A DNA stretch of 55,999 nt from Octopus sinensis. Its lineage: Eukaryota. This document shows positions 3,467 through 53,180 of this stretch, piece by piece. Every line of letters starts with the position of its first letter. Positions within the stretch are counted from its first letter, which is position 1. The stretch covers positions 1-55,999 of the forward strand of contig NW_021834565.1 of assembly GCF_006345805.1 (NCBI RefSeq), in the 5' to 3' direction. The position numbers and the translations under genes are program-made. Under the pieces are notes generated by a model. It was not told the origin of the DNA, ran no database searches, and saw nothing but the letters and a program-made list of their open reading frames with translations.

Positions 3467-3579
3467 AATATACAGTTACTGTAATAGATTTTGTGACGTC
3501 ATTCTCTGTATCATTGATACACTGGCATAGTTTTCGGATATGACGTAAGGTTGAATTGTGATGGATCAAAGATGGCAGC

Positions 3580-3937
3580 AGTGGTCGGATAATGCATGCG
3601 ATGGTAGTGATAAGATGGCGTGTGGGTGTGTGGCGGGGGATGGGGGTCATGTGGATAATGGTGATTGCAGTGGTTATATAAGCTGTGGTGACGGTGGCAA
3701 TGGTCTGTTATTGATACTATAATAATGATACGACTGGTATATATGGGATTTCACAGGAATGGTGGCGGTGGCGGCGGTGGCGGTGGTGGTGGTGGTGGTG
3801 GTGGTGGTGGTGATGATGAGATGATTGTGGCAGTGGCGGCGATAGGTTGAGAGCGGTGATGGCGGCGGTGGTGGTAGTAATGCTGCCAGTGATCTTGGTC
3901 GTAGTACTACTGGTAGCAGCTTTCATATAACTGCTGC

Positions 3938-3968
<31 letters not shown>

Positions 3969-4646
3969 GGTGATGGTGGTGATGATGGTGGTGGTGGCGG
4001 TGGCCGCGGTGGTAGTGGTGGTGTTTTAATAATGGCGACAGTGGTGGCCGTATTGGTAATAGTGAGTTTGATAATAGTTGTGATGCTGCTTATAAAAATT
4101 GATGTAAGCGGGGATGGTGAAGATGATGATGATAACGATGACGATGATGATGATGATGATGATAACTATGACGACGACGATGAGGATAACAACGACAATG
4201 ACGATGATGATTATTATGATGATGATATTAGTAGTGTTTGTGAAGGTGGTGGTAGTGATGATGGTGGTGATGATGATGAGATGACGACGATGTTGTTGAT
4301 GATGATGGTTATTATTATTATGATGATGATGATGATGATGTTGATGTTAGTGGTGGTGGTGGTGGTAGTGGTGGTTGTGGTGAAGATGAAGGTGATGATG
4401 ATGATGACGACGATGACGGCGATGACGACGATGAAAATGACTTCTATTATTATGATGATGATGATGACGATGTCGATGATGGTGATGGTGATGATGATGA
4501 CGATGGCGAGGACGGCTATGACGATGATGATAATTATGATGATGATGATGTTAATGGTGGTGGTAGTAGTGGCTTTTGTGATGGATATGGTGATGATGAT
4601 GAGGACGACGACAACGACGGCGACGATGACGATGATTATGTTAGTG

Positions 4647-4706
<60 letters not shown>

Positions 4707-4740
4707 AGGGGATGGTAGTGATAGTGATGGTTGTGCTGAC
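3580..4740. repeat. Degenerate (GGT)/(GAT)/(GTA) trinucleotide tract
   Basis: Directly visible. Confidence 0.9.
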
Positions 4741-5189
4741 GATTACACAGAACCTATTAACATCTGTAATTTCGTTTGTTTTTGTTTTGTATTGTTTCCT
4801 TTTGTGGGGTGGGAAGGAGGCGGGGTGGTTGCGCTTTTTCTTAACTTTTGGTTAACTCTGTCTCGCAACAAAAAAGCTTTCCAACCGTAAACATTGCCTC
4901 TCATTTTCAAAACATCTAGCTAGGACCTCATTATCTATTTTTGCCCCATCCGCTGTTGTTGTTGCTGTTTACGATGTTGTTGCTTCTTGCTTGTTTGTTT
5001 GTTGAGCGAAGCGGTCTTCGTCCCAGAGCTCGCAAGATCGCGCCTCAGGATCGTTTCTAGTGGGAAAAGTCCGAAACGTGGTCCTTTGCTATTCGTAAGA
5101 CCCGCAGAAGACAAAGCAGGTCAACCTCCGACACCGAGAACATCGATGGATGGATGAATGTGCATCCAGGCTCAGTGGTTGCGTAGGAA

Positions 5190-6566: not shown

Positions 6567-6587
6567 GAGAGAGAGAGAGAGAGAGAG

Positions 6588-6995
<408 letters not shown>

Positions 6996-7315: not shown

Positions 7316-8003
7316 ATACACGTTACACCGCCACCTATATACACTTTCTAAAGGTCACGAAATTTGACCTTTTTTCCACCATGTCTTTCAGGTTATATTT
7401 TTCTTTTGTTTATTTGTTTCTAAAAACTCAACAATTCAAAGCGAGGCTTCTGGTTGGAGCCACGTGCTTAATTGAACTGTCACGTCTGTCGATTAACTCT
7501 TTTTCCGGCTCTTGTTCATCTTGATTTTGCTGTTGTTTTTTGTTGTTTTTTGTAGTTTTCGTTGTTGCTATAGTCACAGCTTATTTCGTATTTGATTTTT
7601 TTTGTTGTTATTTTCTAATTCTATTGTTTTTCTTTCGACGTTGTTACTGTTATTGTTGTTGTTGTCCGCTGTCGTCGTTTTGGCTGCCTGTGTGCCGGGT
7701 GTCAAATTTCTAATGGTAGGCCTTTTACTAAACAACATTCTTCAATACGGTTTCTAAACGTCGATGGATCCTTTTTCTTTAATTTAAGTCCGTTTAAATG
7801 TTTTAAAGACAATACAAATGTATACACATACAACTTTGTATTTCTCCCCTGAATAATAAAGACAGAAATTGTCAGCAATCTAGATTAGGACCCGTATATA
7901 ACCTTTGATTTTACATACCTTCTTAAAAATGGAGCATTACGTACCCAGACGTTTTGCTCACCTCTGTCACCAACAATTATTATTTTGATTTTGTATTTGG
8001 TTT

Positions 8004-8401
8004 AATGCGGCGAGCTGGCAGAATCATGAGCATGCCAGGCGAAGTGCTTAGCGGTATTTCGTCTGCCGCTACGTTCTGAGTTCAAATTCCGCCGAGGTCG
8101 ACTTTGCCTTTCATTCTTTTGGGGTCGATTAAATAAGTACCAATTACGCACTGGGGTCGATATAATCGACTTAATCCGTTTGTCTGTCCTTGTTTGTCCC
8201 CTCTGTGTGTAGTCTCCTGTGGGCAGTAAAGAAATAGGTATTCTGTCTGTCTTTATGTTCTGAGTTCAAATTCCTCCGAGATCGACTTTGCCTTTCATCC
8301 TTTCGGGGTCGATAAATTAAGTACCAGTTGCTTACTGGAGTCGATCTAATCGAATGGCCCCCCTCCCCAAAAATTTCGGGCTCTGTGCCTAGAGTAGAAA
8401 A
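8004..8401 (+). mobile_element. Dimeric tRNA-derived SINE (family B monomer + 5'-truncated B2 monomer) with a 17 bp TSD
   Basis: A box TGGCAGAATC, B box GAGTTCAAATTCC, core GTCGACTTTGCCTTTCAT; GATTTTGTATTTGGTTT at 7987-8003 and 8402-8418. Confidence 0.9.
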
Positions 8402-12600: not shown

Positions 12601-14566
12601 AAAAAAGGAAAGAAATATGTGGAGGAGCAAAATGTAAGGAACGACCCAAAGTGTCGAAAGACATCGGAATATTTTATAAAAACGTCCTCAACAAAAATTA
12701 AATGGTTGAGAAAACTACATCAGTATACACGGATGCTCCATCAAATCAAATGAAATAAATCGAGGGTACAACAACACCATACCATGATACCAACATTCCC
12801 AGAAAATATGTTGGGAAGAAGTAATGTGAATCCTAAATTATCCATGTTTGGCTCCCTCCAAACACAACATGTGTGAAACCAAGGATCACTGGGGAGAAGA
12901 TATATTTCCATGGATATTCCGACTGACCCCCTCCCCACCATTCAGGTTTTATTTATGATTCCTCGTGATATGTAGATTCTGATCCTTTGATTTCGATTGT
13001 ATTCCATAATTGTGAATGTATTCATTGACATTTACATTCCCACTGCCCCCCCCCCTTTTTATTAGACTCAGATCATATTTATGATTTTTTTAAAGACATT
13101 CAGATATCATATTTATTATTGAGAAGCACTTTCCCATACTTAGTCAGATTGTATTTAAAATTATAACTATACCTACTTAAAAATCACTCTTTCAAAAACA
13201 TAGCCATACACGGCTAAATATAAAAAAATAACATCTGGAATTTTAATTTTAAAAAATTGACCAGATCCATACAACCACTCACTCCCCCTTGCATTAATGA
13301 ATACAAAAGAATTAATAGAACAAGACCTTGAAACGTAATTATAATTCTTACTGGAGAAATCAAAACCAGCATCTGGTTTTCCAATTAAAAACTTCGACCA
13401 CTTGAATACAAAAATTCCTTTTCTACCCCACCATAACGCCACTAAGTGGACAAACAGCAGCATATTGAATCCTAATCAAACAAGTTTGACCCCCACTGAT
13501 GCAAAATCCACGCCTCCTTCACCTCCCGCTGCCTCTGAAACTTTCTTTCTTTTCTCTTCCTTCGCAACCCCAAAGATAACAAGAATACAATCCCAATACA
13601 CACTCCTACTTTTTTTTCTCTTCATTATCTCTTACTCTTTCCTCTTCTCTCACCTCTGCATTATCCTTTCTAATTTGTTCCTCTCCCTCTCTCTCCCTCT
13701 CTCTCCCTCTCCCTCTCTCTCCCTCTCCCTCTCACTCTTTCTCCCTTTACTAAAACATCATTAGTTTCAATTTTATATAAGATGGTGGAGCAAACTTAAA
13801 ATAAACCACTTTTTTGATGAATCCGATAACAGAAGAAAGCGCTCAAAATGTAAATAATAAATATAATCATCCGACATTCTGACTACTTTGTACATGGTGC
13901 GGCAACATAAAGCGAAAAGAGACTCATGTGCGAATTACGATGTCACGATATTTATGAAACCGCGTTCTCAATATAAAAGTTAGAAAATGTACAAAATGTG
14001 ACCTTCAACTTTGAATAAGTCAATTCATTATAATACGCTTCTTACCAATATATATATATATAAAAAACCTCTTTCACACTGCATGCAAATTACCCTGGTA
14101 ATAATAAAAACTGGATTTATGACGAAGTCGAATCTATATAACAACGAAAGTACGATATTGAAATATGATACGCGTTATGATACACACATTAATGGAATAG
14201 TTATCCGAATTAAACAAATTGTTACTAAATTATTTTTGATTGATTACTTGTAAATTTATAAAAATTATCATTCATAGATTGACATTAGTATTTGTACACA
14301 ACTGTTTTGTTAAAACTGAGTATACGATAATTAAACTTAATTAATTATTAATATAACTTAATTTCGATGAACTAACGAATTTTTTTGTGACAAAAAGATA
14401 CCGTAGAATGTACAACATATAATGATTCCAATATTTTTGGACAACAATGTTAGTCCCTTACTATTTAAGGTTTATTATATCATTTTGTAACCCTTTTGTG
14501 CGCGCGCAATTTTCAATTCGAGTTCCGTGCTTTTTAAGGCAACGCTTGTAATATTTTATATACGTA

Positions 14567-14979
14567 GGCGCAGGAGTGGCTGTGGTAAGTAGCTTGCTAA
14601 CCAACCACATGGTTCCGGGTTCAGTCCCACTGCGTGCATCTTGGGCAAGTGTCTTCTGCTATAGCCCCGGGCCGACCAATGCCTTGTGAGTGGATTTGGT
14701 AGACGGAAACTGAAAGAAGCCTGTCGTATATATGTGTATATATATAAGTGTGTGTGAATATGTTTGTGTGTCTGTGTTTGTTCCGCTAGCATTGCTTGAC
14801 AACCTATGCTGGTGTGTTTACGTCCCCGTCACTTAGCGGTTCGGCAAAAGAGACCGATAGAATAAGTACTGGGCTTACAAAGAATAAGTCCCGGGGTCGA
14901 TTTGCTCGACTAAAGGCGGTGCTCCAGCATGGCCGCAGTCAAATGACTGAAACAAGTAAAAAGAGTAAAGAGTAAAGAG
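14567..14979 (+). mobile_element. tRNA-derived SINE family A, full length
   Basis: A box TGGCTGTGTGG, B box GGTTCAGTCC, MIR/CORE-like CTTGGGCAAGTG segment, internal microsatellite, AAAGAGT tail. Confidence 0.92.
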
Positions 14980-16114: not shown

Positions 16115-16307
16115 CAGGCGTGGCTGCATGTATAGACGCTGACGTGACTGTGTGGTAAGAAACTTGCCTCCCAACCACATTGTTCTGAGTTCTGTCCCAC
16201 TGCGTGGAACCTTAAGCTAAGGTCTTCTATTACAGCCTTGTGAGTAGATATGGTAGATGGAAACTGAAACAAGCCCGTCGTGTATATATATACACACACA
16301 CATAAAT

Positions 16308-16338
<31 letters not shown>

Positions 16339-16348
16339 CATGCATACA

Positions 16349-16382
<34 letters not shown>

Positions 16383-16390
16383 CATATATA

Positions 16391-16423
<33 letters not shown>

Positions 16424-16530
16424 CTAGGTGTATATAGTTATATTTGTGTCTCTGTGTCTGTTTTCTCCCCACTATCGCTTGACAACTGATGTTAGTGTAT
16501 ATTCGTCCCAGTAACCAAGCAGTTCGGCAA
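16115..16530 (+). mobile_element. SINE family A, degenerate
   Basis: Same head, GGAAACTGAAACAAGCCCGTCG, and CGCTTGACAACTGATG. Confidence 0.8.
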
Positions 16531-19510: not shown

Positions 19511-19946
19511 TGTAGTTAAGACCCGGCACAGAGACGGTTTTATAATATTAATTTGATGAGATACACAGAAATATTAATCCTAGATAAGTCGATAGTTTTT
19601 CGTAAAGAAATTCGCCGAAGTCTTCCAACCTTCTGGCGAAATATTGTTATCATAAGGCAATAAAGAATTACATGGACTTCCCACTTATAAATACAATAAA
19701 AGGCCGGGTCTTTATAGGAAATTGAACATACGACTATTTTTCTTATTTCTTTGTTTAGCATCTACGAAGTGAAACAGCTTTAGTTGAAGTCTGTGAGGTG
19801 TGGCACAGCAAAATCTGGAAGCATTCTACTGTGTTTTCTTAACTAAACAGAAAAGTTTCTTAGAGATTTATTTCAGAGATTAGTGTCCCCTTCTCTGAGC
19901 AAATGCGCCGCAATTCTTCGACTAAAAACCTTAATCGCTATATATT

Positions 19947-20166
19947 TATTTCTTTATTGCCCACAGAGGGGTAAACATAAAGGGGACAAACAAGGGGATT
20001 AAGTCGATTACATCGACCCCAGTGCGTAACTAGTTCTTATTTAATTGACCCTGAAAGGATGAAAGGCAAAGAGAACCTCGGTGGAATTTGAACTCAGAAC
20101 ATAACGGCAGACGAAATACCACTAAGCATTTCGCCCGGCGTGCTAACGATTCTGCCAGCTCGCCGC
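19947..20166 (-). mobile_element. SINE family B
   Basis: Reverse complement of the 8007-8237 monomer. Confidence 0.9.
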
Positions 20167-21574: not shown

Positions 21575-22244
21575 AAGTAGCGAGTTGGCAGAAACGTTAG
21601 CACGCCGGGCGAAATGCTTAGAGGTATTTCGTCTGTCTTTACGTTCTGAGTTCAATTTCCACCAAGGTAGAATTTACGTTTCATCCTTTCGGGGTCGATA
21701 AATTAAGTACCAGTTACGCACTGGGGTCGATGTAATCGACTTAATCCCCTTGTCTGTCCTTGTTTGTTCTCTCTATGTTTAGCCCCCTGTAGGCAATAAA
21801 GAAATAAGAAACCTTGGCACGCCCGTGCGAAATGCGTAGCCGTATTTCGTCTGCCGTTAGGTTCTGAGTTCAAATTCCGCCGAGGTCGACTTTGCCTTTT
21901 ATCATTTCGAGATCGATAATTTGAGTACCATTTGCATACTGTGGTCGATCTAATTGACTGGCCCCTCCCACCAAAATTCGAGCCTTGTGCCTAGAGTAGA
22001 AACATTATTTAAAAGGCGGCGAGCTGGCAGAATCGTTAGCGCGTTGGACGAAATGCTTAGCGGTATTTTGCCCGTCGCTGGATTCTGAGTTCAAATTCCG
22101 ACGAGGTCAACTTTGCCTCTCATCCTTTCGGGGTCGATAATTAAAGTACCAGTTTCACACTGGGGACAATGTAATCGACCTAATCCGTTTGTCTGTCCTT
22201 GTTTGTCCCCTCTATGTTTAGCCCCTTGCGGGCAATAAAGAAAT
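21575..22244 (+). mobile_element. Three tandem family B/B2 SINEs
   Basis: Monomers at about 21575-21809, 21810-22003 (B2 tail GTGCCTAGAGTAGAAA) and 22015-22244. Confidence 0.9.
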
Positions 22245-22299
22245 ATATAGTTATTTTTTTATTGTGAAACAAAGCGTTGCTGCTCCTGCTGCTAGTTAG

Positions 22300-24395: not shown

Positions 24396-24546
24396 TTCTT
24401 TTATTCTTTCATTCGTTTCAGTCATTTGACTGTGGCCATGCTGGAGCACCGTCTTAGTCGAACAAATCGACCCCAGGACTTATATTTGTAAGCCTAGTAC
24501 TTATTCTATTGGTTCCTTTTTGCCGAACTGCTAAGTTACAGGGACG

Positions 24547-24549
<3 letters not shown>
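24396..24549 (-). mobile_element. SINE family A, 3' half
   Basis: Reverse complement of TTACGTCCC...GAAACGAATGAAAG. Confidence 0.85.
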
Positions 24550-24629
<80 letters not shown>

Positions 24630-24637
<8 letters not shown>

Positions 24638-25690: not shown

Positions 25691-25720
<30 letters not shown>

Positions 25721-25722
<2 letters not shown>

Positions 25723-25866
25723 CGACAGGCATTTTTCAGTTTCCGTCTACCAAAGCCACTCACAAGGCTTTGGTTGGCCCGAGGCTATAGTAGAAGACTA
25801 TAGTAGTGGGACTGAGCCGGAATCATGTGGTTTGTAAGCAAGCTACTTACCACACAGCCACTCCTT
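25721..25866 (-). mobile_element. SINE family A, 5' half
   Basis: Reverse complement of the GGAGTGGCTGTGTGGTAAG head through CCTGTCGTA. Confidence 0.85.
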
Positions 25867-26010
25867 GCGTTAGCAACAAGTATTGATAACACGCTTCGGT
25901 AATGACAACGTTAGCATTATTAGCAGCAATATATTGAGCGGTAGTAATGTTCGGAAGAACAGCAGCATTAGCAATGTTCAGAGCCACAAAAACAGCAGCA
26001 ACAACGACGC

Positions 26011-26160
26011 ATGGACAGAGTGTCTGGGGAAGAAGTAATGGACTGGGCTGCAGTAAATAGAAAACAGCTTCGTGAGATAAGCGCTGAGCAAATGAGATTT
26101 TTGGGTCATGTGATGAGGAAAGAGGGCCTGAACAATTTAGCGATGATTGGAATGAAAGAA
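26011..26160 (+). mobile_element. RTE-clade LINE fragment (post-RT C-terminus)
   Basis: DRVSGEEVM...RKQLREISAEQMRFLGHVMRKEGLNNLAMIG resembles the RTE motif RVSNEEVL...QL.FLGHV.R..GLE.L...G. Confidence 0.75.
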
Positions 26161-26232
26161 GAACGATTCCAACTTTGTGATATATTCCTTGTGAATATGA
26201 AAGGCCTGTTAGTCATGGAAAAGTTATTTGTA

Positions 26233-26397
26233 GGCGTAGGAGTGGCTGTGTGGTAAGTTGCTTGCTTACCAACCACATGGTTCCGGGTTCAGTCCCACTG
26301 CGTGGCACCTTGGGCAAGTGTCTTCTACTGTAGCCTCGGGCAGACCAAAGCCTTGTGAGTGGATTTGGTAGACGTAAACTGAAAGAAGCCCGTCGTA

Positions 26398-26438
<41 letters not shown>

Positions 26439-26667
26439 GGGGGGGGCGTATATGTTTGTGTGTCTGTGTTTGTCCCCTCCAACATCGCTTGACAACGGAT
26501 GCTGGTGTGTTTACGTCCCCGTAACTTAGCGGTTCGGCAAAAAGGAACCGATAGAATAAGTGCTAGGCTTACAAAGAATAAGTCCTGGAGTCGATTTGCT
26601 CGACTAAAGGCGGTGCTCCTGCATGGCCACAGCCAAATAACTGAAACAAGTAAGAGAGTAAAAGAGT
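26233..26667 (+). mobile_element. SINE family A, full length
   Basis: High similarity to 14567-14979. Confidence 0.92.
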
Positions 26668-27097
26668 AATAACATGGCGACTATAAGCTAAGAATTTGAT
26701 ACATCTTTTAATCCGGCAGAAAGAGTAAACCGAGATAAATATGGTCACAACGTGTTGCACTGGCAAATAATGGAACCTGCAATATTATGACCGTCGGCTG
26801 TAAAGCGGAGTAGCCATTAAAACATACTCCTTCACGAGAATATATCAGTTGCAAATAATGAACGAAATGTTACTCTTTTAAATATCAAATTTCCGGAAAT
26901 ATAGAAAACTCCGAATACATTGAGACTGGGAAAATAAATTCCTCGTTAATTGCCTCGCATTTTAAATTCGTTTATATTTATCTTCATTAAAATATTCTTA
27001 CATTTGTCCAGTAATGTTTTACCGAGCCGAAATTTCTAAGATACCGTCGTATCGCACGTTCGATGTACGATATAACGGGATAATAATAATAATAGCA

Positions 27098-29767: not shown

Positions 29768-29976
29768 TTATTTCTTTATTGACCACAGGGGACAAACAAG
29801 GATAGACAAAGGGATTAAATCGATTATACCAGTGCGTAACTGGTACTTATTTAATCGACCCCGAAAGGAAAAAAAGGCAAAGTCGACCTCGGCGGAATTT
29901 GAACTCAGAACATAAAGACAGACGAAATGTCGTGAAGCATTTCGCCCAGTGTGCTAACGATTCTGCCAGCTCGCCA
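29768..29976 (-). mobile_element. SINE family B
   Basis: Reverse complement of the family B monomer. Confidence 0.9.
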
Positions 29977-30263
29977 CACTCAAACTGCGACTAATATTAT
30001 TACAATTATTACTTCTAATACTACTACTACTGCTATTACTAATGTTACTACTGTTTCTACTACTAATACTAATATTATTGCAACTACTACTACAACTGCT
30101 ACTGCTACTTGAACAATAAGGCCTACATAACGCTGTAGCAACAGAGAAATGTGTAACATTGCTTTGGAAGTAAATTGAACGATGGAGAAGAGTTCAATAA
30201 AAGAAAGAGCAAGCGAGAGAGGGAGCGGGGGGGGGAATTGAGGTAGACCGACAGATAGACAGG

Positions 30264-31081: not shown

Positions 31082-31245
31082 AATAATAATGATGTAGGGT
31101 AAGAGAAGAGGGAAGGGAAAAACAAGAGAGAACAAAAGAAAGAAAGAAGAAAGAAAGAAGGAAGGAAAGAAGGAAAGAAAGGAGGAAAAATGAAGGGAAA
31201 AAGAAAGAAAGAGAGAAAGAAAGAAGGAAAGAAAGAAAGAAGAAA

Positions 31246-31306
<61 letters not shown>

Positions 31307-31380
31307 AGGAAAGAAGGAAAGAAAGAAAGAAAGAAAACAGAAAGAAAGAAAGAAAGAAAGGAAAAAGAGACGGTGGAAAC
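30895..31380. repeat. (AAT)n, (GAT)n, (AAT)n and (GAAA)n microsatellites
   Basis: Directly visible. Confidence 0.95.
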
Positions 31381-32009: not shown

Positions 32010-32345
32010 CTTGCTTGCTTTGCTTGTTTCATGCTCTTGTTTGATGGTGCTGGAATTATCCCAGGCTGGTGGTCCCAGAGGCATCATCGTGCGTAGAGCC
32101 GACCCGGTCAACCATTGCTAGCGGTTCCATACCAGCACTTCTGCACCTCCAAGATGACGTCGAGTCGCCAGAGATCTTTCTTAATCACGTCCAGCCATCT
32201 GGTGCGAGGCCTTCCACGGGGCCTCTTCCAGCTCGCAGCTGGTAGGATGATCCGGAAGGAGGTGGAAGACATATCCGCACCAGAGCATGCGACGATGGAT
32301 AGCTACGGTGAGCAGCTATATGCTGCAGGCTGAAGCAGGAGCGAA
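32010..32345 (-). mobile_element. RTE-like LINE 3' end, frameshifted, with short-repeat tail
   Basis: Minus translation IHRRMLWCGYVFHLLPDHP / WKRPRGRPRTRWLDVIKKDL; tail AAGCAAAGCAAGCAAG. Confidence 0.8.
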
Positions 32346-32779
32346 GGCAGTTGCTTGTTTGAAACGTGGTGATACCTACCATCTGATGTTCTCAGTTTGT
32401 TATCATATAGGTAGATTTGTTTTCATAAATTTTGTATTACATATTAGGTATCGATCAACAAACGGAGATTTGTTATAACAAAGTTGTCTTAGATATAGGA
32501 TAACCAATTTAAACAACATAGGACAAAGTTACATATCTTACATATATATATATATATATAATAATAATAAATCTCTGAGCGAGATATAAACAGTAACTGC
32601 TCTATAACATAAGGGGGATCAGCCATCTGAATGTGGCTAGGGTCAGGGCGGGGTAGTGGGGGTGTTACTGATGCATTTAGCCCCAGGCGATCATCAACGT
32701 CACCAGAAGGGCTGACACCATCTTGGTGTCCTTGCCAGCCTGCAAAGGGAGATCAGCCTCCCCGAAGATACGGATACTA

Positions 32780-32822
32780 CATACGGACCGGTTTCGAGGT
32801 TATTGCCTCTTGTCAACGCATG
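32780..32822 (-). ncRNA. Type I hammerhead ribozyme, U3-A8 variant (copy 1)
   Basis: CATGCG-TTGACAA-GAGG CAATAA CCTC-GAAAC CG GTC-CGTATG: 6 bp stem I (one G.U), 4 bp stem II, GAAA, palindromic ACCGGT stem III, GUC site; predicted cut between 32786 and 32785. Confidence 0.82.
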
Positions 32823-33139
32823 GTAAGCACCGTTCTTCGTTGAGGGACTTCCTCTACAGGCTGGATATATAGGGATTTTCACAGTAACCACAGTCACTGG
32901 CGTAGAAAATCCGTTCGAAAACAATAATAAATCTCTGAGCGAGATATAAACAGTAACTGCTCTATAACATAAGGGGGATCAGCCATCTGAATGTGGCTAG
33001 GGTCAGGGCGGGGTAGTGGGGGTGTTACTGATGCATTTAGCCCCAGGCGATCATCAACGTCACCAGAAGGGCTGACACCATCTCGGTGTCCTTGCCAGCC
33101 TGCAAAGGGAGATCAGCCTCCCCGGAGATACGGATACTA

Positions 33140-33182
33140 CATACGGACCGGTTTCGATGTTATTGCCTCTTGTCAACGCATG
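33140..33182 (-). ncRNA. Type I hammerhead ribozyme, U3-A8 variant (copy 2, stem II mismatch)
   Basis: Same as copy 1 except CCTC->CATC, giving a G.A mismatch at the third stem II pair; predicted cut between 33146 and 33145. Confidence 0.72.
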
Positions 33183-33699
33183 GTAAGCACCGTTCTTCGT
33201 TAATTCAAACATTTTGTAGTTATAACGAATGTCGATGGATTATAACCAGGTTCAAATCGTAGATATGACACATTAGTTATTAATTGCTTGTAGGAACACC
33301 GAATTTCGCTTTGCAACCATAATATGCTACCAAGTAAAGCGTTTATTAAGGGTTTATAAGTCAACAGTGTCCTATATTTTGAGTTAGCAGTCCGATTCAG
33401 TATCGTTTGCATTATCTCTACGTATTTTCTATTGAATTGGGAGCCAACACTGAAACTTGCAACGTTTCGTATAAGGAACGTCGTAAGTGTTAGCTCTGAA
33501 ATCAAAAGAATATTTGCAGAGCAAATTAAAAACGTAGATATTTTCGATATTTTTGAATAACAAATTTAGATGTTTTTGACATTTATTTCTCAATCTGCTG
33601 CTTGTTTCTTCCATGAATTTGAGGCTGGTGTTGACCTATTTTATAGTCTCTTCAAGTTGATGTTTATCATATCGCATTGCGGGTGTTTTGTCGCCCATG

Positions 33700-33900: not shown

Positions 33901-34109
33901 CCTGATGCATAACATACTGGAGTCACGCATATTCGTCTACAGAGTTGACCTTACATACACAGATAGATACACACACACACACACATAGTGTGTGACTATG
34001 CACATGAGTAAGTCTCCTTGAGTATAAATTTTAATGTTTCGTGTGTGAATGCGACTGAATGGTGAGACGACGAAACTCTGAGTAATATATGGGCGATATT
34101 GTTGGCGTA

Positions 34110-35420
34110 GTGGTAGTAGTAGTAGTAGTAGTAACGTTGGTTGTTGTGGTGGCGATGCTGGCGCTGATGTTGGTGTTGATGTTAGCTTCGGTGAATACAG
34201 AATGAGGTATAGTTACGACAGAGGCGATGATGATGATGATGATGATGATGGTTGTGGTCGTGGTGGTAGTGGTGGAGGCGGCGGCGGTGATGGCGGTGAT
34301 AGCTGTGGGTCATTGCTAGAACAACAAAAGCGTTGATGGCGATAGTGATGATGGTGGCGGCGGCATTGATGGTGGTGGTGGTGGTGGTGGTGGTGGTGGT
34401 GGTGGTTACGATGGTGTTGGAGGAAGTGATGGTGCTAGAGCTAATGTTGTTGTTGGAGGTGATCGTGGGGATGGCGGTGGTGGTGATGGCGATGGTAATG
34501 GCTGAGTTGTTGTTGGTGGTGGTGGTGTTTGTGGTGACGGATGAAGTGGCGGTGGTGGTGGTGGTGGTGGTGGTAATGAAAGTTAAGGTGGTGGAAAATA
34601 TGGTGTCGGTTGTTGTACGAATGGTAGTAACATTAATAGATACGGTAGTAGTGTCTGTAGGGTTTGGTGTTTTTGTCGTTGCTGTTGTCATTGATGGTGG
34701 TGGTGGGGATGGAGGTGGCGGCGTGTGAGGATCGCTGGTGGAATAGGAGGTAGTGCCCTCGGTGGTTGTAGTAATGGTGTTGTGCATGGATGATGGAGGT
34801 GGAATATGATGGTGGTGCAGTTTGCAGGAGCGGTGGTGGTGGTGGTGGTAGTGAAGATGACAGTGGTTGTAGTGGTATTGTAGGAGGTGGTTGTGGTGAC
34901 TCTAGAGGTTGTGGTTGTGGCGTTGGTGATGGGGTTGGAGTCAGTGTTGGGGTTTGGACTTGATGTTGTTGTTGTTGGAGGTGATGGTGGTGGAGATGGA
35001 GGTGCGGGTGGTGCTGGAGGTAGTGTCTTGTTGGAGCTGACATTGCTGATGGTGGTGGTAGTTGCGGTGGTGGTGGTGGTGGTGGTGGTGGTAGTGGTGG
35101 GGGTGGATGGTGGTGATGGTGGTAGTGGTGGTGGTGCTGGAGGTAGTGTCTTGTTGGAGCTGACATTGCTGATGGTGGTGGTGGTGGTATTCATGATGAT
35201 GATGGTGGTGGAGGTCATGGCTGTAGCAGTGGTGGAGGTGGTTGTGATGGTGGCGGCGGTCGTCTTGGTGGCGGTGCCGGTGGTTGTGATAGTTGTGTTG
35301 ATGGTTGTAGTGGTAATTGTGGTGGTGATGGATTTAGTGGTGGCGATGTTGGTGGTAGTGGTGGTGGTGGTGGTGGTGGTGGTGGTGGTGGTGGTAGTGG
35401 TAGTGATGTTGGCGATGCTT
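34110..35420. repeat. (GGT)/(GAT)-rich degenerate trinucleotide tract with an internal about 50 bp duplication (120 bp period)
   Basis: GTGGTGCTGGAGGTAGTGTCTTGTTGGAGCTGACATTGCTGATGGTGGTG near 35007 and 35127. Confidence 0.9.
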
Positions 35421-37819: not shown

Positions 37820-38126
37820 TTATTTTTTTTTTTTATTGTATTAAAACTCAGAGCATATTTTGCTGGGTATGATGGAAAGTGTCAGCTGTTCCACATCCAG
37901 CAGCCTAAGGTTTTGTTGGTCATGCTTCAAGAACCCTGCAAAGGATTCTTGCAGTTCCAATCAATGCTGATTTTCGTAGGTGTTCTACCTTCACACTTGC
38001 ACCAATCTTTTTCAGCCATGTTGGTAGTTGAATGCCGATACTCCCAAGAGCACCAATTTCTATTGCTATCACGTCTACTCCCTTCATTGACCACCAAACT
38101 TCGTATTTCGCAGTCCAAATAATCAT
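37820..38126 (-). mobile_element. R4/Dong-type (restriction-like endonuclease) non-LTR retrotransposon 3' end
   Basis: KYEVWWSMKGVDVIAIEIGALGSIGIQLPTWLKKIG...LRKSALIGTARILCRVLEA* matches the RLE C-terminus (KY..L..W....V.PIVIGALG...ALLGTARIL); poly(A) then (TAA)n at the 3' end. Confidence 0.82.
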
Positions 38127-38457
38127 AGCAGTTTATTTTTTTCTTCTTCTTTCTCTTTGATCCTGTTGTCACCGGAGTATGCTATGTTGATAATCATACA
38201 TGTTCTTTCTTTTTTAATCACCACAGCAGTGTCCGGTTTCCAACGTCTGGTCGGGTGATCGCACTGGATCATTGCATCCCACAGGATTTTACAATTCATA
38301 TTATTGGTGAATCTTTCTGGAATTTTCTCATACCACGTCTTTGCTCTTTGTAGGCCGTGATTTACACAGAGCTCCTAATGGAGCTCTCAGTTATTATGTG
38401 TTGTTATTATTATCATCATCATCATTGTCATCATCATCGTCATCGTCATCGTCATCG

Positions 38458-40429: not shown

Positions 40430-40885
40430 TGTTTTTTTGTCTCGGTCACTTGACTGCGACTATGCTGGAGCACCGCCTTTAGTCGAACAAATCGACCCCA
40501 TGACTTATTCTTTGTAAGCCTAGTACTTATTCTATCGGGTTCTTTTGCTTAACCGCTAAGTTATGGGGACGTAACCACACCAACATTGGTTGTCAAGCGA
40601 TGGTGGGGACAAACACAGACACACAAATACATACATACATACATGCATGCATATATCTATATATATATGCATGTATATATATAGGCATATATATATGTAT
40701 ATATATATATATGTATATATAAGTAAATATATATACGACAGGCTTTATTCAGTTTCTGTCTACTAAATCCACTCACAAGGCTTTGGTCGAGGCTATAGTA
40801 CCACTTGCCCGAGGTGCCGCGCAGTGGGACTGAACCCGGACCCATGTGGTTGGTAAGCAAACTATTTACTACACAGCCACTCCTT
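40430..40885 (-). mobile_element. SINE family A, near full length
   Basis: Reverse complement of the 14567 copy with an internal (TA)/(CATA) tract. Confidence 0.9.
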
Positions 40886-42177
40886 CGTATCTTAACAAGT
40901 CTTTTATACAAATGTTAATATTTAAGTATGAAAATATAATGAGACTTTTCCAACATGTGGGTCTAGGGGAGCGCCGTAGGAATCATTGGTTTCAACAGTA
41001 TTGTATTTCCTACTTCGGATAAAGCAATGCCATGGAACACGTAAATCGATGAGGAGAGCATAACTAGATTAGCGTTAGTCCTCAGGATCCGTCGAGGACC
41101 CGGGGCAATGCAGCGCATTACAGTCTTTCAATAAGCAACCACGGTATACCTTGCTTAGAAATTACAAACCACCTTTGATAAAGTGCAGAATTAGATGCAG
41201 AGTCTCGTTGGTAATGTGTTCTTCCCATGAATCCAACTGCTCTATCTTCGGCGGAATATTAAAAATCGATATTTTTTTCTACATTTATTTCCCAGAGAAG
41301 GTCAAAAAATGAGTTTAGTTCCCTGGTCAAATAATTTTCAGAATTTCACCTCAGAATTTGGCTTAACGATTCGTATCTGCATTTCTTAGGTTTTCACGGA
41401 CACGTAACAAATTAAATGCGAATAGTAATACTTTCACATTGTTTTCCTGCAGAATATGATTTTGATCTTTTTTTTAAATCCAAAATCTTAGCTGACCGAA
41501 GTGTACAATAGGAAATGTTCTAGAATATGCTATTTCTGTCGGGTTTATCTTTACTCTATCCATTTATGTGTTCAGGTTTGTGTGAGATATTTTTTAGCAG
41601 CTCATCGTATTTCATTAAAATTCTTTTTCAATTATTCTCCTACAATTTATATTAACTGATATTCAAATATGAACGTATATTTTATATTTTAACATTCGGG
41701 TGTACCACCCTGAGGAATTTTAATCGAATGGATCTACAAATATGAGAAATAAATAAAAGAATATAAGACTAATATGGAGAAAGTTCTTTTGGTTGAATTG
41801 GGGGAAACATTCCTCTCCAGATTTGGATTATCCTACATCTAGTTCACTTATGGTTTCTACAGTCAGACGGCAGGTGACACAACATTTCTTCCTTTTCTTC
41901 TCTTTTCTTTCTTATCCCGTATTTGTTCATCCTTCCACTCTCTGCATCAAACTTCTCGTTTGTTTCTCCTAGTTCCTCATGTACCAGTGTCCTGATTTTC
42001 AGATAGAACGGAACATACCATGTGCTCAGAGATCGAAGATTGCTTGAAGACACCGGGGATGTTATAATATCCTGACTAGACACGTGTTTTCACAGCAAGA
42101 AACTATTAGTAGCTCGCATATTTATACTGTTTACATAAATAACATATTTACTTATATACAATATATGTGTATGTATG

Positions 42178-46571: not shown

Positions 46572-46790
46572 TTAATCCAAACATGAAAACACAAACAGAA
46601 AACGCAACAACACGAGGGGTGGAAGAAGTATAGTGTTATTGGACGCTCAGAAAAGGAAAGAAAGAAGGAGGATCTAATGTTTCGAGCGGAGCTCTCGTCA
46701 GAAACATAGGAAAAGGAAAGATCCATGGAAGGAAGACGAGGAAAAAAATCGCCAACGATACACCACCGGTCATACATATACACATATACA
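46570..46790 (-). mobile_element. Penelope-like terminal repeat with a minimal hammerhead motif (46705-46672)
   Basis: GTTT-CTGACGA-GAGC TCC GCTC-GAAAC ATT-AGAT; core intact, stems I and III partly decayed; same layout as 17262-17297. Confidence 0.6.
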
Positions 46791-47697: not shown

Positions 47698-47749
47698 GTC
47701 ATAATTGTTCGATCAATTATACTTTATTATTCGCTTTTATATATTTATA

Positions 47750-47912
47750 GGCGCAGGAGTGGCTGTGTGGTAAGTAATTTGCTTCCCAACCACATGGTTC
47801 CGTGTTCAGTCCCAATGCGTGGCACCTTGGGCAAGTGATTTCTACTATAGCCACGGCCCGACCAAAGCCTTGGGAGTGGATTTGGTAGGCGGAAACTGAA
47901 AGAAGCCCGTCG

Positions 47913-47944
<32 letters not shown>

Positions 47945-48275
47945 TGCATGTATGTATGTATGTATGTATGTATGTATGTATGTATGTATGTATGTATGTA
48001 TGTATGTATGTATGTATGTATGTATGAATGTATGCATGTATGTATGTATGTATGTATATGTATGTTTGTGTGTGTATGTTTTTCCTCACCAACGCTTGAC
48101 AACCGATGCTGGTGAGTTTACGTCCCCGTAACTTAGCGGTTCGGCAAGAGACCGATAGAATAAGTACTAAACTTACAAAAAGTAAGTCTCGGAGTCTATT
48201 TGTTCAGCTAAAAGGCGGTGCTCCAGCATGGTTGCATTCAAATGGCTGAAACAAATGAAAGAATAAAAGAAAAGA
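47750..48275 (+). mobile_element. SINE family A, full length, internal (TATG)n
   Basis: High similarity to 14567 and 26233. Confidence 0.92.
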
Positions 48276-50759: not shown

Positions 50760-51760
50760 ATTTGGGGGGAGGGGTTAAGTCGATTACATAGACCTCAGTA
50801 GGCTGCTGGTACTTATTTAATCAACCCTGAAAGGATGAAAGCCAAAGTTGGCCTCAGCGGAATACCTATTTCTTTATTACCCACAAGGGGCCAAACACAG
50901 AGAGGACAAACAAGGACAGACAAACGGATTAAGTCGATTATATCGACTCCAGTGCGTAACTGGTACTTATTTAATCGACCCCGAAAGTATGAAAGGCAAA
51001 GTCGACCTCGACGGAATTTGAACCCTAGAACGTAGCGGCAGACGAAATACCGCTAAGCATTTCCGTCCAGCGTGCATCATCATCTTCATCATTACCGCCA
51101 CCAATCATCGCCGCCTTAACAATACCTTTTTGGTTGGTACTCCGTCGGTTACGACGACGAGTGTTCCAGTTGATCCAATCAACAGAACAACCTGCTCGTG
51201 AAATTAACATGCAAGTGGCTGAGCACTGCACAGAAACGTGTACCTTTAACGTAGTTCTCGGGGAGATTCAGTGTGACACAGGGTGTGACAAGGCTGGCCC
51301 TTTGAAATACAGGTACAACAGAAACAGGAAGATAGAGTGAGAGAAATTCGTGGTGAAAGAGTACAGCAGGGTTTGCCACCACCCCTGCCGGAGCCTCGTG
51401 AAGCTTTAGGAGCTTTCGCTCAATAAACACTCACAATACCCGGTCTGGGAATCGAAACCGCGATCCTACGATCGCGAGTCCGATGTCCTAACCACTGGGC
51501 CATTGCGCCGCCACCTTAACAATACCTATTTCTTTACTACCCACAGGGGGCTAAACACAGAGAGGACAAACAAGGACAGGCATAGGTATTAAGACGATTA
51601 TATCGACCCCAGTGCGTAACTGGTACTTATTTAATCGACCCCGAAAGGATGAACGGCAAAGTCGACCTCGGCGGAATTTGAACTCAGAACGTTGCGGCAG
51701 ACGAAATACTGCTAAGCATTTCGCCCGGCGTGCTAACGATTCTGCCAGCTCACCACCTTA
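50760..51760 (-). mobile_element. Stack of minus-strand SINEs (B partial, B, C-head/D-tail chimera, B)
   Basis: Units at about 50760-50860, 50866-51118, 51136-51513 and 51524-51757. Confidence 0.85.
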
Positions 51761-51934
51761 ACAATACCAATCATAATGACAATAGGAACAACCACATTAC
51801 AACAACAGCAAAACCACCTGCTTTACTACCAGCGATAAGCGTACGTGTTATGATAACCACAAACATGAGACGTCCAACATCAAAACCGAAACTACGTAAC
51901 CACGTTGTACGGGGATTAATATACATGACATAGT

Positions 51935-53180
51935 AAGGCTACGAGATGGCAGAATCGTTAGCACGCTGGGCGAAATGCGTAGCCGTATTTCGTCTGCCGC
52001 TACGTTCTGAGTTCAAATTCCGCCGAGGTCGACTTTGCCTTTTATCCTTTCGCGGTCGATAAACTAAGTACCAGTTACGCACTGGGGTCTATGTAATCGA
52101 CTTAATTCGTTTGTCTGTCCTTGTTTGTCCCCTCTGTGTGTAGCCCCTTGTGGGTAATAAAGAAACATGTATAACCACGTTGTACGGGGATTAATATACA
52201 TGAGATAGTAAGGCTACGAGATGGCAGAATCGTTAGCATGCAGGGCGAAATGCTTTGCGCCATTTCATCCGTCTTTATGTTTTGAGTTCGTGATCGATTG
52301 ACGAAATAATACCAGTTGAACACGGAGGTCGACATAGTCGGCTTAGGCCCTCCCTCCAAAATTTCTGACATTTTTCCAAAATTTGAAACCAATACAAAAT
52401 ATAGTCCACTATTATGTTAGATCCTAAGGCTGTGAGTTGGCAGAACCGTTTTCACGCAGGGCGAAATACTTGCGGTCTTCCGCCTCTCGCTACGTTCTGA
52501 GTTCAAATTCCGCCGAAGTCCACATTGCTATTCATCCTTTCGGGGTTGATAAATTAAGTACAAGTTGCGTACTGGAGTCGATCTAATCGACTGGCCCCCT
52601 CCCCCAAAATGTCAAGCCTTGTGCCTAGAGTAGAAAAGAATAATGATTTCTGTTGTAATTGTATTAATTATATTGTATTAATTATTGTTATTGTTATTAC
52701 TATTACTGAGCCGGTCAAAGTGCAAAGATGCATTCCGTCCATGTTTTCCTCTTGAGTTCACGTGCCGCTGAGGTGAACTTTGCCGTTCATTCTTTCGGCG
52801 TCTTTACGTTCTGAGATCACATTCCGCCGTGGTCCACTTTGCTTTTCATCCTTTCGGGGTCGATAAATTAAGTACAAGTTGCGTACTGGAGTTGATCTAA
52901 TCGACTGGCCCTCTCCCCCAAAATGTCAGGCCTTGTGCCTAGAGTAGAAACGAGTATATAAGATCCTAAGGCAGCGAGCTGGCAGAACCGTTTGCACGTC
53001 GGGCGAAATACTCAGCAGCAATTCGTTCGTCTTCATTTTCTGAGTTCAAATTCCGCTGAGATCCACTTTACCTTTCATCCTTTCGGCGTCAATAAAACAA
53101 GTACCAGTTGCATACTGGGGGTCGGTGTGGTCGACGTCCCCTCTTCCCCGAACTTGCAAGTCGTGTGCCAAAATTGGAAA
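51935..53180 (+). mobile_element. Stack of plus-strand family B/B2 SINEs
   Basis: Repeated heads TAAGGC..GAG.TGGCAGAA at about 51935, 52210, 52426 and 52966; repeated B2 tails GTGCCTAGAGTAGAAA. Confidence 0.85.

What the first reader, a model, noticed from the sequence alone, without database searches (positions are those of the whole stretch)
32563..33201. Candidate cephalopod retrozyme: 360-nt repeat unit delimited by hammerhead ribozymes
Seen: two 279 bp direct repeats (3 differences, so very young) separated by 81 bp, GC-richer than the flanks, with no real ORF, ending at a (TA)n tract. Each repeat holds a complete type I hammerhead on the minus strand, and the two predicted GUC cuts are exactly 360 nt apart. 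The unit is also rich in hairpins (GACACCA/TGGTGTC, GGCTG/CAGCC, AGCCA/TGGCT, GGATTTTC/GAAAATCC, GAGG/CCTC). Known: retrozymes and newt satellite 2 / Schistosoma Sm-alpha-like repeats are non-autonomous retroelements whose hammerhead-cut monomers circularise, and Penelope-like elements carry the same minimal hammerheads in their terminal repeats. Inference: a read-through minus-strand transcript would be cut into a 360-nt monomer that could form an abundant circular RNA and be mobilised in trans, probably by a Penelope-type RT. I am not aware of this family being described in octopus, but cannot check.
Basis: partly seen in the sequence, partly recalled or inferred. Interest (0 to 1): 0.92.

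Follow-up and report, generated by a model that had tools for sequence, protein, structure and literature searches.

The report
Octopus hammerhead-ribozyme repeat (retrozyme-type element)
A 639-bp insertion in octopus DNA holds almost two tandem copies of a 360-nt non-coding unit, each with a self-cutting hammerhead ribozyme, which is the layout of the known animal "retrozyme" elements that make small circular RNAs; it is a new example of a known kind, not a new kind.

Summary
Window 32563-33201 contains two 279-bp direct repeats with 3 differences, 360 bp apart start to start (1.78 tandem units). GC is 50% against 37-39% in the flanks. There is no real ORF, and the left edge abuts an (AT)9 tract.

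Each repeat carries a type I hammerhead on the minus strand. Helix I is 6 bp plus a closing stem, helix II is 4 bp, and helix III is the minimal palindrome ACCGGU. The GUC cuts fall at 33146|33145 and 32786|32785.

The core is UUGACAA, not CUGAUGA. This is the U3-A8 covariation of the C3-G8 pair, documented in nature and active in vitro. The 5' copy also has a G.A mismatch in helix II.

Because of the variant core, Rfam gathering thresholds and standard CUGANGA descriptors miss the motif. A strict descriptor still expects only 0.01 such motifs per shuffled window.

The 360-nt circle folds well on the ribozyme strand (z = -3.6). Two hammerheads cofold into the classic double hammerhead.

Shared SINE families place the window in an octopod, Octopus bimaculoides or a relative.

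Best reading: a dimer-class genomic copy of a non-LTR retrozyme. Copy number, transcription, cleavage and circles could not be tested. New member of a known kind; moderate interest.

The parts
32563..33201 (-). Whole element: 1.78 tandem units (639 bp) of a 360-nt hammerhead-bearing non-coding repeat. The RNA sense is the minus strand.
   Evidence: Direct repeat with 360-bp spacing. The GC step is 0.50 against 0.38-0.39 in the flanks. There is no other copy in the window.
32786..33145 (-). The one complete 360-nt monomer, lying between the two predicted GUC| cleavage sites. It is the predicted linear, then circular, RNA.
   Evidence: Cut sites come from the motif positions. The circular fold is -115.2 kcal/mol, z = -3.6 against 200 dinucleotide shuffles, with 61% of bases paired. 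The antisense strand gives z = -1.4.
33126..33196 (-). Hammerhead A, the 5' copy in the RNA. Helix I 5' strand is 33182-33177 and the UUGACAA core is 33176-33170. Helix II spans 33169-33156 and has a G.A mismatch at 33158. GAAA is 33155-33152, followed by ACCGGU and C17 ending at 33146. Helix I 3' strand is 33145-33140.
   Evidence: Rfam HH9 scores 22.7 bits, E 0.0074, below the gathering score of 52. My own covariance model scores 105 bits. The helix II mismatch is shown.
32766..32836 (-). Hammerhead B, the internal copy, with all helices intact. Helix I is 32822-32817 paired with 32785-32780 (6 bp), plus a closing stem. The UUGACAA core is 32816-32810. Helix II is GAGG/CCUC at 32809-32796 with loop CAAUAA. 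GAAA is 32795-32792. Helix III and the cleavage triplet ACCGGUC end at 32786.
   Evidence: It is the only hit of the strict descriptor in the window, with 0.01 expected by chance. Rfam HH9 scores 27.2 bits. The minimum-energy fold forms helices I and II.
33146..33201 (-). 56-nt 5' leader that would be released by cleavage at site A. The element starts only 5 nt upstream of the first paired base of hammerhead A.
   Evidence: Sequence and repeat boundaries.
32563..32785 (-). 223-nt 3' partial unit, left after cleavage at site B. It ends ...GAUUUAUUAUU at the (AT)n tract.
   Evidence: Sequence and repeat boundaries.
32842..32922 (-). 81-nt part of the unit that is present only once. It holds the GGAUUUUC...GAAAAUCC hairpin.
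32542..32559 (.). (AT)9 microsatellite abutting the 3' end (RNA sense) of the element. It is the presumed insertion target.
   Evidence: Sequence. (TA)n is listed as the preferred target in the diagram of PLE clade structures and named for Naiads in the text of PMC8557442.

Best explanation
The locus is a genomic copy of a non-autonomous, non-coding retroelement of the animal (non-LTR) retrozyme type, sitting in octopod DNA.

Shown here:
- 1.78 head-to-tail units of 360 bp.
- Each unit carries a type I hammerhead on the minus strand. It has 6 bp of helix I plus a closing stem, 4 bp of helix II, a U3-A8 variant of the catalytic core, and a minimal palindromic helix III (ACCGGU).
- The unit folds into a self-paired circle on that strand.
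- Two hammerheads pair into a double hammerhead.

Inferred from the published retrozyme model:
1. A minus-strand transcript running 33201 to 32563 brings the two hammerheads together through the 6-bp ACCGGU/ACCGGU helix III.
2. Each ribozyme cuts after GUC (33146|33145 and 32786|32785). [quoted passage not shown]
3. A host tRNA ligase (RtcB type) closes it into a circle.
4. A reverse transcriptase supplied in trans, most likely from a Penelope-like element, copies the circle for more than one turn, primed at a nicked (TA)n site. That would give exactly this kind of >1-unit tandem insertion.

This particular copy is probably already decaying. Hammerhead A has a helix II mismatch, so release of the monomer from this locus may be inefficient.
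For: Tandem register and boundaries.

Hammerhead anatomy.

Non-randomness: 0.01 strict-descriptor hits are expected per shuffled window.

Resemblance to type I hammerheads beyond the core: the helix I internal loop UUACC...GUA and the A-rich loop 2 align with the HH9 consensus.

Core variant: the U3-A8 covariation is documented as natural and active in vitro (PMC3088659). About 1,300 such motifs were found with that core in the Schistosoma genome, after the variant was first seen in the Cercyon Penelope-like element (PMC4209133).

Canonical metazoan architecture: that paper describes helix I of 6 bp, helix II of 4 bp, and helix III of 1-2 bp capped by a 2-4-nt palindromic loop, active as dimers in tandem repeats. 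This matches the motif here.

Dimer: the cofold gives the double hammerhead at -46.7 kcal/mol, against 2 x -20.9 for the monomers.

Circle: z = -3.6 on the sense strand against -1.4 on the antisense strand. Helices I and II stay free to form in the circle, as reported for most metazoan retrozymes.

Family definition: type I HHR, 150-450-bp tandem units from dimers upward, no LTR/PBS/PPT, GC below 50%. Mussel units are 350-390 bp (PMC7229834).

More-than-unit-length cDNA is what the model expects from a circular template (PMC7761336).

Octopod origin.

Penelope-like elements are among the recently active TEs of Octopus vulgaris (PMC13282606). A PLE-style minimal hammerhead motif lies in this same window and in O. 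bimaculoides.
Against: Only one locus is known. No second copy was found in the window or in 76 kb of O. bimaculoides, and none in viral or metagenome collections. So multi-copy status and covariation among paralogues are unproven.

The motif fails Rfam's curated thresholds.

One of the two ribozymes has a helix II mismatch.

There is no clear target-site duplication. At most there is AAT on both sides, and the flanks align no better than shuffles.

GC of 49.7% is at the very top of the range reported for animal retrozymes and well above the local genome.

There is no sequence similarity to the mussel or coral retrozymes outside the ribozyme logic.

No expression data could be consulted.
Confidence: 0.72

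Rival explanations
1. The locus is a remnant of an autonomous Penelope-like element. On this reading it is a partial tandem of PLE terminal repeats (pLTRs), which carry hammerheads, left after 5' truncation or internal deletion. It would not be a dedicated non-autonomous family.
For: PLEs insert as partial tandems with hammerheads in the pLTRs and favour microsatellite targets such as (TA)n (PMC8557442). The U3-A8 core was first reported in PLE hammerheads (PMC4209133). A 2026 preprint argues that animal retrozymes are themselves derived from PLE pLTRs, so the two readings shade into one another.
Against: There is no RT or GIY-YIG remnant in or near the element, and no Pfam domain in the 150 longest high-entropy stop-free segments of the window. 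The two hammerheads are 360 nt apart with nothing resembling a truncated ORF between them. The hammerhead has the canonical retrozyme architecture: 6-bp helix I with a closing stem, 4-bp helix II and a palindromic helix III. It lacks the PLE 'min-HHR' features of a long helix II, a bulged base after A9 and no helix III.
Confidence: 0.13
2. The locus is an LTR-like arrangement rather than a tandem. On this reading two 279-bp terminal repeats flank an 81-bp internal region, as in a miniature of the plant LTR retrozymes.
For: From a single locus, a 1.78-unit tandem cannot formally be told apart from repeat-spacer-repeat.
Against: The hammerhead is type I, not the type III of LTR retrozymes. The 81-nt segment shows no evident primer-binding site or polypurine tract (by inspection only). 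There is no 4-6-bp target-site duplication. Animal retrozymes are described as lacking LTR, PBS and PPT.
Confidence: 0.05
3. The locus is an ordinary local tandem duplication of unique DNA that happens to contain a hammerhead-like string. On this reading there is no ribozyme and no mobile element.
For: Only one locus is known. The motif is below Rfam thresholds. No relatives were found anywhere.
Against: The strict descriptor expects 0.01 hits per window by chance. The motif also has features the descriptor did not ask for: an 11-bp closing stem, an HH9-like UUACC/GUA internal loop, an A-rich loop 2 and a perfectly palindromic ACCGGU. The compensated U3-A8 pair is the one core change known to keep activity. 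There is a sharp GC step and a junction at (AT)n. The good fold is strand-specific.
Confidence: 0.07

Closest known systems
Non-LTR retrozymes of invertebrates, e.g. the Mytilus galloprovincialis 350-390-bp repeats (Cervera & de la Pena 2020, PMC7229834)
   Same: Both have a type I hammerhead in a short non-coding tandem unit, 360 bp here. Both belong to the dimer-to-multimer class of loci, lack LTR/PBS/PPT, have a self-paired predicted circle with the ribozyme free to fold, and occur in a mollusc host whose genome also holds Penelope-like elements.
   Different: There is no sequence similarity. The core here is U3-A8, whereas the published sets were restricted to CUGANGA. GC is about 50%, above the local genome rather than low. 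Copy number and circRNA expression are unknown here.
Newt satellite 2 and axolotl retrozymes (dimeric type I hammerheads)
   Same: Both have a weak, palindromic helix III, so that two tandem ribozymes must pair as a double hammerhead to cut. Units are about 330-350 bp.
   Different: The host is an invertebrate, and helix III here is the 6-nt palindrome ACCGGU. The amphibian families have up to about 10^5 copies, whereas only one locus is known here.
Minimal hammerheads of Penelope-like elements, including the U3-A8 variant first seen in the Schistosoma mansoni Cercyon PLE (PMC4209133)
   Same: Both are type I, carry the U3-A8 covariation of the C3-G8 core pair, are palindromic at 15.2-16.2, depend on dimer formation, and are associated with retroelements inserted as partial tandems.
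   Different: PLE min-HHRs typically have a longer helix II with a bulged base after A9, no helix III loop and a short helix I. This motif has the canonical 6-bp/4-bp architecture with a long closing stem. No RT/EN ORF is attached.
Rfam Hammerhead_HH9 (RF02275), with its Xenopus/Schistosoma-like type I relatives
   Same: It is the best Rfam match. The UUACC...GUA internal loop of helix I, the A-rich loop 2, GAAAC and the GUC site are shared.
   Different: The score is 22.7-27.2 bits against a gathering score of 52. The core differs (U3, A8), and helix III is 5 nt shorter. HH9 occurs as conserved single intronic copies, not as tandem units.

Membership tests
Animal non-LTR retrozyme | Type I hammerhead with a catalytic core and helices I-III able to form | tested here: met
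   Helix I is 6 bp plus a closing stem, helix II is 4 bp, followed by GAAA, ACCGGU and GUC|. The core carries the compensated U3-A8 pair, which is documented as natural and active. The chance expectation is 0.01 per window. One of the two copies has a helix II G.A mismatch.
Animal non-LTR retrozyme | Short tandem units of about 150-450 bp, dimer or longer, each unit with one hammerhead | tested here: met
   The unit is 360 bp and there are 1.78 units. Two complete hammerheads lie 360 nt apart.
Animal non-LTR retrozyme | No protein-coding capacity | tested here: met
   The longest ORF is 74 aa and the longest stop-free stretch is 92 aa. There are no exact or similar proteins and no Pfam hit. 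The two library hits are artefacts of internally repeated proteins.
Animal non-LTR retrozyme | No LTR, PBS or PPT | not tested
   By inspection only, nothing PBS- or PPT-like is seen in the 81-nt single-copy segment. No formal search was run.
Animal non-LTR retrozyme | Low GC content (<50% in the text, <45% in the figure legend) | tested here: inconclusive
   GC is 0.497. This is just under 50% but above 45%, and well above the flanks (0.38-0.39).
Animal non-LTR retrozyme | Monomer predicted to form a stable, highly self-paired circle | tested here: met
   The circular minimum-energy fold is -115.2 kcal/mol, z = -3.6, with 61% of bases paired. The antisense strand gives z = -1.4.
Animal non-LTR retrozyme | Multi-copy, dispersed family within the genome | not testable with these tools
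   No cephalopod genome can be searched by DNA here. There are 0 further copies in the 56-kb window or in 76 kb of O. bimaculoides, which only excludes extreme abundance.
Animal non-LTR retrozyme | Expressed as linear and circular RNA of unit length | not testable with these tools
   No transcriptome data are available.
Animal non-LTR retrozyme | Co-occurrence with Penelope-like elements in the host genome | tested here: met
   The literature reports 31 recently active PLE families in O. vulgaris. A PLE-style min-HHR motif in this window is conserved, with a compensatory helix II change, in O. bimaculoides. The evidence is indirect: no PLE ORF lies in the window.
Rfam Hammerhead_HH9 (RF02275) / hammerhead clan CL00010 | Score at or above the curated gathering threshold | tested here: not met
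   There are 0 matches at gathering score. The two copies score 22.7 and 27.2 bits against 52. The shortfall is explained by the U3/A8 core and the shorter helix III.
Autonomous Penelope-like element | ORF with RT and a GIY-YIG endonuclease between the terminal repeats | tested here: not met
   No RT or EN domain is found among 150 stop-free segments of the window. Only 289 non-ribozyme nt lie between the two hammerheads.
Plant-type LTR retrozyme | Type III hammerheads in LTRs, PBS, PPT and a 4-bp TSD | tested here: not met
   The motif is open at helix I, which makes it type I. There is no 4-bp TSD.

The most novel reading that the evidence does not exclude
Octopuses may carry an active retrozyme family whose hammerhead uses the U3-A8 core. 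On this reading the family has escaped both Rfam-based annotation and the CUGANGA descriptors used in every survey of animal retrozymes. It would produce an abundant 360-nt circular RNA in octopus tissues and would be mobilised by the Penelope-like elements reported as recently active in octopus. That would imply the census of animal hammerheads and retrozymes is systematically incomplete for core-covarying families.
Probability: 0.3. Interest if true: 0.55.

Novelty: new member of a known kind. Interest (0 to 1): 0.36.

Why it matters
Ribozyme-made circular RNAs can reach up to about 1% of total RNA in mussel tissues, yet their roles are unknown. Cephalopods, with unusual RNA biology and TE-rich genomes, have not been examined for them.

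This locus gives a concrete 360-nt probe and a testable ribozyme. It also shows that a canonical-architecture retrozyme hammerhead can carry the U3-A8 core. Searches that fix CUGANGA or rely on Rfam thresholds would therefore miss such families.

It does not change the picture of what retrozymes are.

Tried and rejected
1. Exact look-up of 16 ORFs from the element and its flanks in the 15-billion-protein collection found none.

2. A word-based homologue search with the 70-aa plus-strand ORF found nothing. A search with a LINE-tail fragment, meant to identify the organism, also found nothing.

3. A full HMMER scan of 1.84 billion representatives with the 92-aa stop-free minus-strand stretch gave two hits at E about 1e-7. 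Both are translations of internally repeated sequences. A single 30-bit chance alignment is counted 3-5 times in each, so I rejected them as artefacts.

4. A scan of viral contigs for the exact hammerhead pattern gave 0 hits. A metagenome scan for any U3-A8 core followed by CGAAACCGGUC gave 32 hits. That is about the number I estimated for chance, and none has both helix I and helix II.

5. I looked for a long target-site duplication or repeated flanks. The flanks align no better than shuffles.

6. I tested for sequence homology to the published mussel and coral retrozyme clones. There is none.

7. A covariance model built from the two hammerheads finds no further copy in the window plus the O. 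bimaculoides locus.

8. I looked for a Penelope-like RT/EN or any other protein domain in the window. There is none.

9. There are no tRNA genes in the window, so no tRNA-derived element was recognised.

10. I compared the sense strand by eye with pol III A/B boxes. The weak B-like and A-like strings are in the wrong order, so I did not pursue this.
Full report

Yes. The repeat finder reports one long direct repeat in the region, 32560-32841 and 32920-33201, 282 nt at 99% identity with 360 bp start-to-start spacing. A base-by-base comparison gives four differences. One of them (32562/32922) sits at the extreme edge. The structure is most simply 1.78 head-to-tail units of a 360-bp sequence.

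The unit has 49.7% GC, against 37.5% and 39.2% in the adjacent kilobases and 37.4% in the whole window. The left edge abuts (AT)9 at 32542-32559.

The longest ORF is 74 aa and the longest stop-free stretch is 92 aa. None is present in, or similar to anything in, the protein collections. The only two hits of the exhaustive HMMER scan are artefacts. Both are translated tandem repeats in which one 30-bit chance alignment is counted several times.

BLASTN at word size 7 finds no other copy of the unit in the 56-kb window.

**2. The hammerhead**

On the minus strand each repeat reads: 5'-...GGUGCUUACC-AUGCG... CAUGCG | UUGACAA | GAGG CAAUAA CCUC | GAAA | C CG G | UC^ | CGUAUG ...GUAGUAUCC-3'.

- Helix I has 6 bp. 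Then comes an internal loop (UAC / U) and a further 11 bp of closing stem.
- Helix II has 4 bp with a 6-nt A-rich loop.
- Helix III is A-U and C-G around a 2-nt CG 'loop'. A 2-nt loop cannot close as a hairpin, so the monomer has effectively no helix III. ACCGGU, however, is a perfect palindrome.
- Cleavage after GUC falls between 33146|33145 and 32786|32785, 360 nt apart.

Cervera and de la Pena saw the same covariation in the Schistosoma Cercyon Penelope-like element, and a descriptor with that core retrieved about 1,300 hits in that genome (PMC4209133). So the two 'mutations' are one compensated change.

That same paper describes the canonical metazoan type I hammerhead. Helix I is 6 bp and helix II is 4 bp. 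Helix III is 1-2 bp capped by a 2-4-nt palindromic loop. It is inefficient as a monomer and active as a dimer in tandem repeats. This matches the present motif feature for feature.

**3. Is the motif more than chance?**

Rfam finds nothing at gathering score in the whole window. With relaxed thresholds both copies match Hammerhead_HH9, at 22.7 bits (33124-33194) and 27.2 bits (32763-32834). The threshold is 52. The shared parts include features outside the core: the UUACC...GUA internal loop of helix I, the A-rich loop 2, and GAAAC...GGUC.

I wrote a strict descriptor requiring a C3-G8 or U3-A8 core, helix I of at least 5 bp, helix II of at least 3 bp, GAAA, a short helix III and UH. It finds the intact copy and nothing else in the window. 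It gives 0.01 hits per dinucleotide-shuffled window; 1 of 200 shuffles had any hit.

The other copy (33126-33196) fails the descriptor only because of a G.A mismatch in helix II, caused by the 32798/33158 difference. A chance motif is therefore very unlikely. It is all the less likely because the motif lies in register with a tandem repeat.

**4. Folding**

The 360-nt monomer folded as a circle has an MFE of -115.2 kcal/mol on the ribozyme strand. That is z = -3.6 against 200 dinucleotide shuffles, with 61% of bases paired. The complementary strand gives z = -1.4.

Helices I and II of the hammerhead are part of the circular MFE structure. The ribozyme is therefore not locked away, as reported for most metazoan retrozyme circles (PMC7229834 discussion).

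Two copies of the 73-nt hammerhead domain cofold into the textbook double hammerhead. It has a 6-bp intermolecular ACCGGU/ACCGGU helix III, two helix II hairpins and trans helix I. The energy is -46.7 kcal/mol against 2 x -20.9 for the monomers. With the mismatched copy A the heterodimer is weaker (-42.1) and A's helix II is not formed. This locus may therefore cut poorly at site A.

**5. Surroundings and organism**

The window is eukaryotic, AT-rich and full of microsatellites. None of its 150 longest high-entropy stop-free segments has a credible Pfam domain. In particular there is no reverse transcriptase or GIY-YIG nuclease.

It holds two SINE-like interspersed families at 69-88% identity and LINE tail fragments. 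One of these, with the motif WKRPRGRPRTRWLD, lies 290 bp left of the element.

A SINE-derived ORF hits 'uncharacterized protein LOC106868243 [Octopus bimaculoides]' at 73% identity. The 76-kb O. bimaculoides locus that encodes it (GCA_001194135.2, CM046612.1) shares the window's SINE families. There are 265 alignments of at least 100 bp at 70-93% identity, the same range as copies within the window. The window is therefore octopod DNA, from O. bimaculoides or a relative.

Neither BLASTN nor a covariance model built from the two hammerheads finds another copy in that locus. This only rules out extreme abundance.

**6. What it is**

The published definition of animal non-LTR retrozymes has these elements (PMC7229834; PMC7761336):
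- type I hammerheads in non-coding tandem units of about 150-450 bp, from dimers to long arrays
- no LTR, PBS or PPT
- GC below 50%
- self-paired circular RNAs of 170-400 nt
- co-occurrence with Penelope-like elements

Mussel units are 350-390 bp. The model predicts that reverse transcription of a circular template yields cDNAs longer than one unit. A 1.78-unit insertion is such a product.

The junction of the RNA-sense 3' end with (AT)9 fits the microsatellite target bias of Penelope-like elements. (TA)n is listed as the preferred target in the PLE structure diagram and named for Naiads in the text (PMC8557442).

Penelope-like elements are among the recently active TEs of O. vulgaris, with 31 families (PMC13282606).

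All features testable from sequence are met or borderline. GC at 49.7% is the borderline case. Copy number and expression cannot be tested with the tools at hand.

No clear target-site duplication exists. There is at most AAT on both sides, and the flanks align no better than shuffles.

The element is only 5 nt longer than the minimum needed to contain two complete hammerhead domains. This may be coincidence.

**7. Age**

Three differences in 279 bp is 1.1% between units. I used the octopus calibration quoted in PMC13282606 (JC 0.09 is about 25 My) and assumed the units were identical at insertion. This gives very roughly 1-2 My. The Poisson error is wide, and gene conversion between the units or a heterogeneous template could distort the estimate. 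This is inference.

**8. Rivals**

- A remnant of an autonomous Penelope-like element is the main rival. It overlaps with the best explanation, since a 2026 preprint derives animal retrozymes from PLE terminal repeats. Against it stand the absence of any ORF remnant and the canonical, not minimal, hammerhead architecture.
- An LTR-like reading (repeat - 81 bp - repeat) cannot be formally excluded from one locus. But the ribozyme is type I, and no PBS, PPT or short TSD is seen.
- A plain duplication with a chance motif is made unlikely by the descriptor statistics and by the extra hammerhead features.

**9. Novelty**

I found no paper that describes retrozymes or analyses hammerheads in octopus. 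The giant squid genome paper lists 235 Rfam Hammerhead_1 hits without comment (PMC6962438). Type I hammerheads in cephalopods are thus already on record at annotation level.

The surveys that defined animal retrozymes kept only motifs with the CUGANGA/GAAAY/RUH core (supplement of PMC7229834). A U3-A8 family would have been filtered out, as it is by Rfam's thresholds here.

The finding is therefore a new member of a known kind with a noteworthy core variant. It is not a new mechanism. Interest is moderate. It gives a ready probe for ribozyme-derived circular RNAs in cephalopods and a caution about descriptor-based censuses. But it rests on one possibly decaying locus.

**10. Seen in passing**

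A second hammerhead-like motif with a canonical core lies at 46705-46672 on the minus strand. It reads GUUU-CUGACGA-GAGC-UCC-GCUC-GAAAC-AUU|AGAU. A relaxed descriptor expects 0.04 hits per window.

The surrounding 85 bp recur in the O. bimaculoides locus at 79% identity (E 8e-13). There the motif reads CCGACGA-A-GGGC-UAC-GCCC-GAAAC-GUC|AUA. Helix II shows a compensatory A-U to G-C change. An extra A follows A9, as in PLE minimal hammerheads. There is also a U4-to-C core mutation.

Both copies are elements of about 200-250 nt flanked by TA/TG/CT microsatellites. They look like truncated Penelope-like tails or short PLE-derived elements. They give indirect support for hammerhead-bearing retroelements in this genome.

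Noticed in passing
window 46672-46705 (minus strand); L033 21588-21667: A second hammerhead-like motif has a canonical CUGACGA core, a 4-bp helix II, GAAAC, no helix III loop and a weak helix I, which is the look of a PLE 'min-HHR'. The surrounding 85 bp recur in O. bimaculoides at 79% identity. That copy has a compensatory A-U to G-C change in helix II, an extra A after A9 and a U4-to-C core mutation. Both copies are elements of about 200-250 nt flanked by TA/TG/CT microsatellites.
   Followed up: partly
window 8003-8241, 19946-20163, 21580-21806, 22013-22245, 29784-29978, 50761-51063, 51527-51759, 51934-52172, 52425-52592, 52800-53135: A SINE-like interspersed family of about 230 bp has at least 11 copies at 78-88% identity. 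One copy gave the protein hit that identified the host as an octopod.
   Followed up: partly
window 6586-6995, 14564-14975, 16134-16490, 24437-24633, 25702-25870, 26232-26669, 40462-40892, 47749-48107: A second interspersed family of about 400 bp has copies at 69-85% identity and is also present several times in the O. bimaculoides locus L033.
   Followed up: no
window 32108-32272 (minus strand): An ORF fragment with the motif WKRPRGRPRTRWLDVIKKDL, which from my own knowledge is typical of the C-terminal tail of RTE/CR1-type LINE ORF2. It is a 5'-truncated LINE copy about 290 bp left of the element, in the same orientation. It has no Pfam hit.
   Followed up: no
window 37923-38374 (minus strand) and 25972-26253 (plus strand): Further LINE-tail-like ORF fragments (...KILWD...IQCD...KPD......FLGHVMRKEGLNNL...). 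They have no Pfam hit and no homologue in the length-restricted search.
   Followed up: no
window 33196-33201: The element begins only 5 nt upstream of the first paired base of hammerhead A. It is therefore almost exactly the shortest piece that can hold two complete hammerhead domains. Whether this is chance or reflects where reverse transcription ends is unknown.
   Followed up: no
window 34099-34600, 31124-31368, 3012-4850: Long imperfect trinucleotide and tetranucleotide arrays, (TGG/TGA)n, (AAGA)n and others, generate most of the long 'ORFs' in the window, with strong GC skew.
   Followed up: no
library proteins P0001, P0002: The representative protein library contains 310-aa 'proteins' that are translations of perfect tandem repeats with periods of about 93 aa (P0001) and 59 aa (P0002). 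They inflate HMMER E-values for any query with a weak chance match to one repeat unit.
   Followed up: yes
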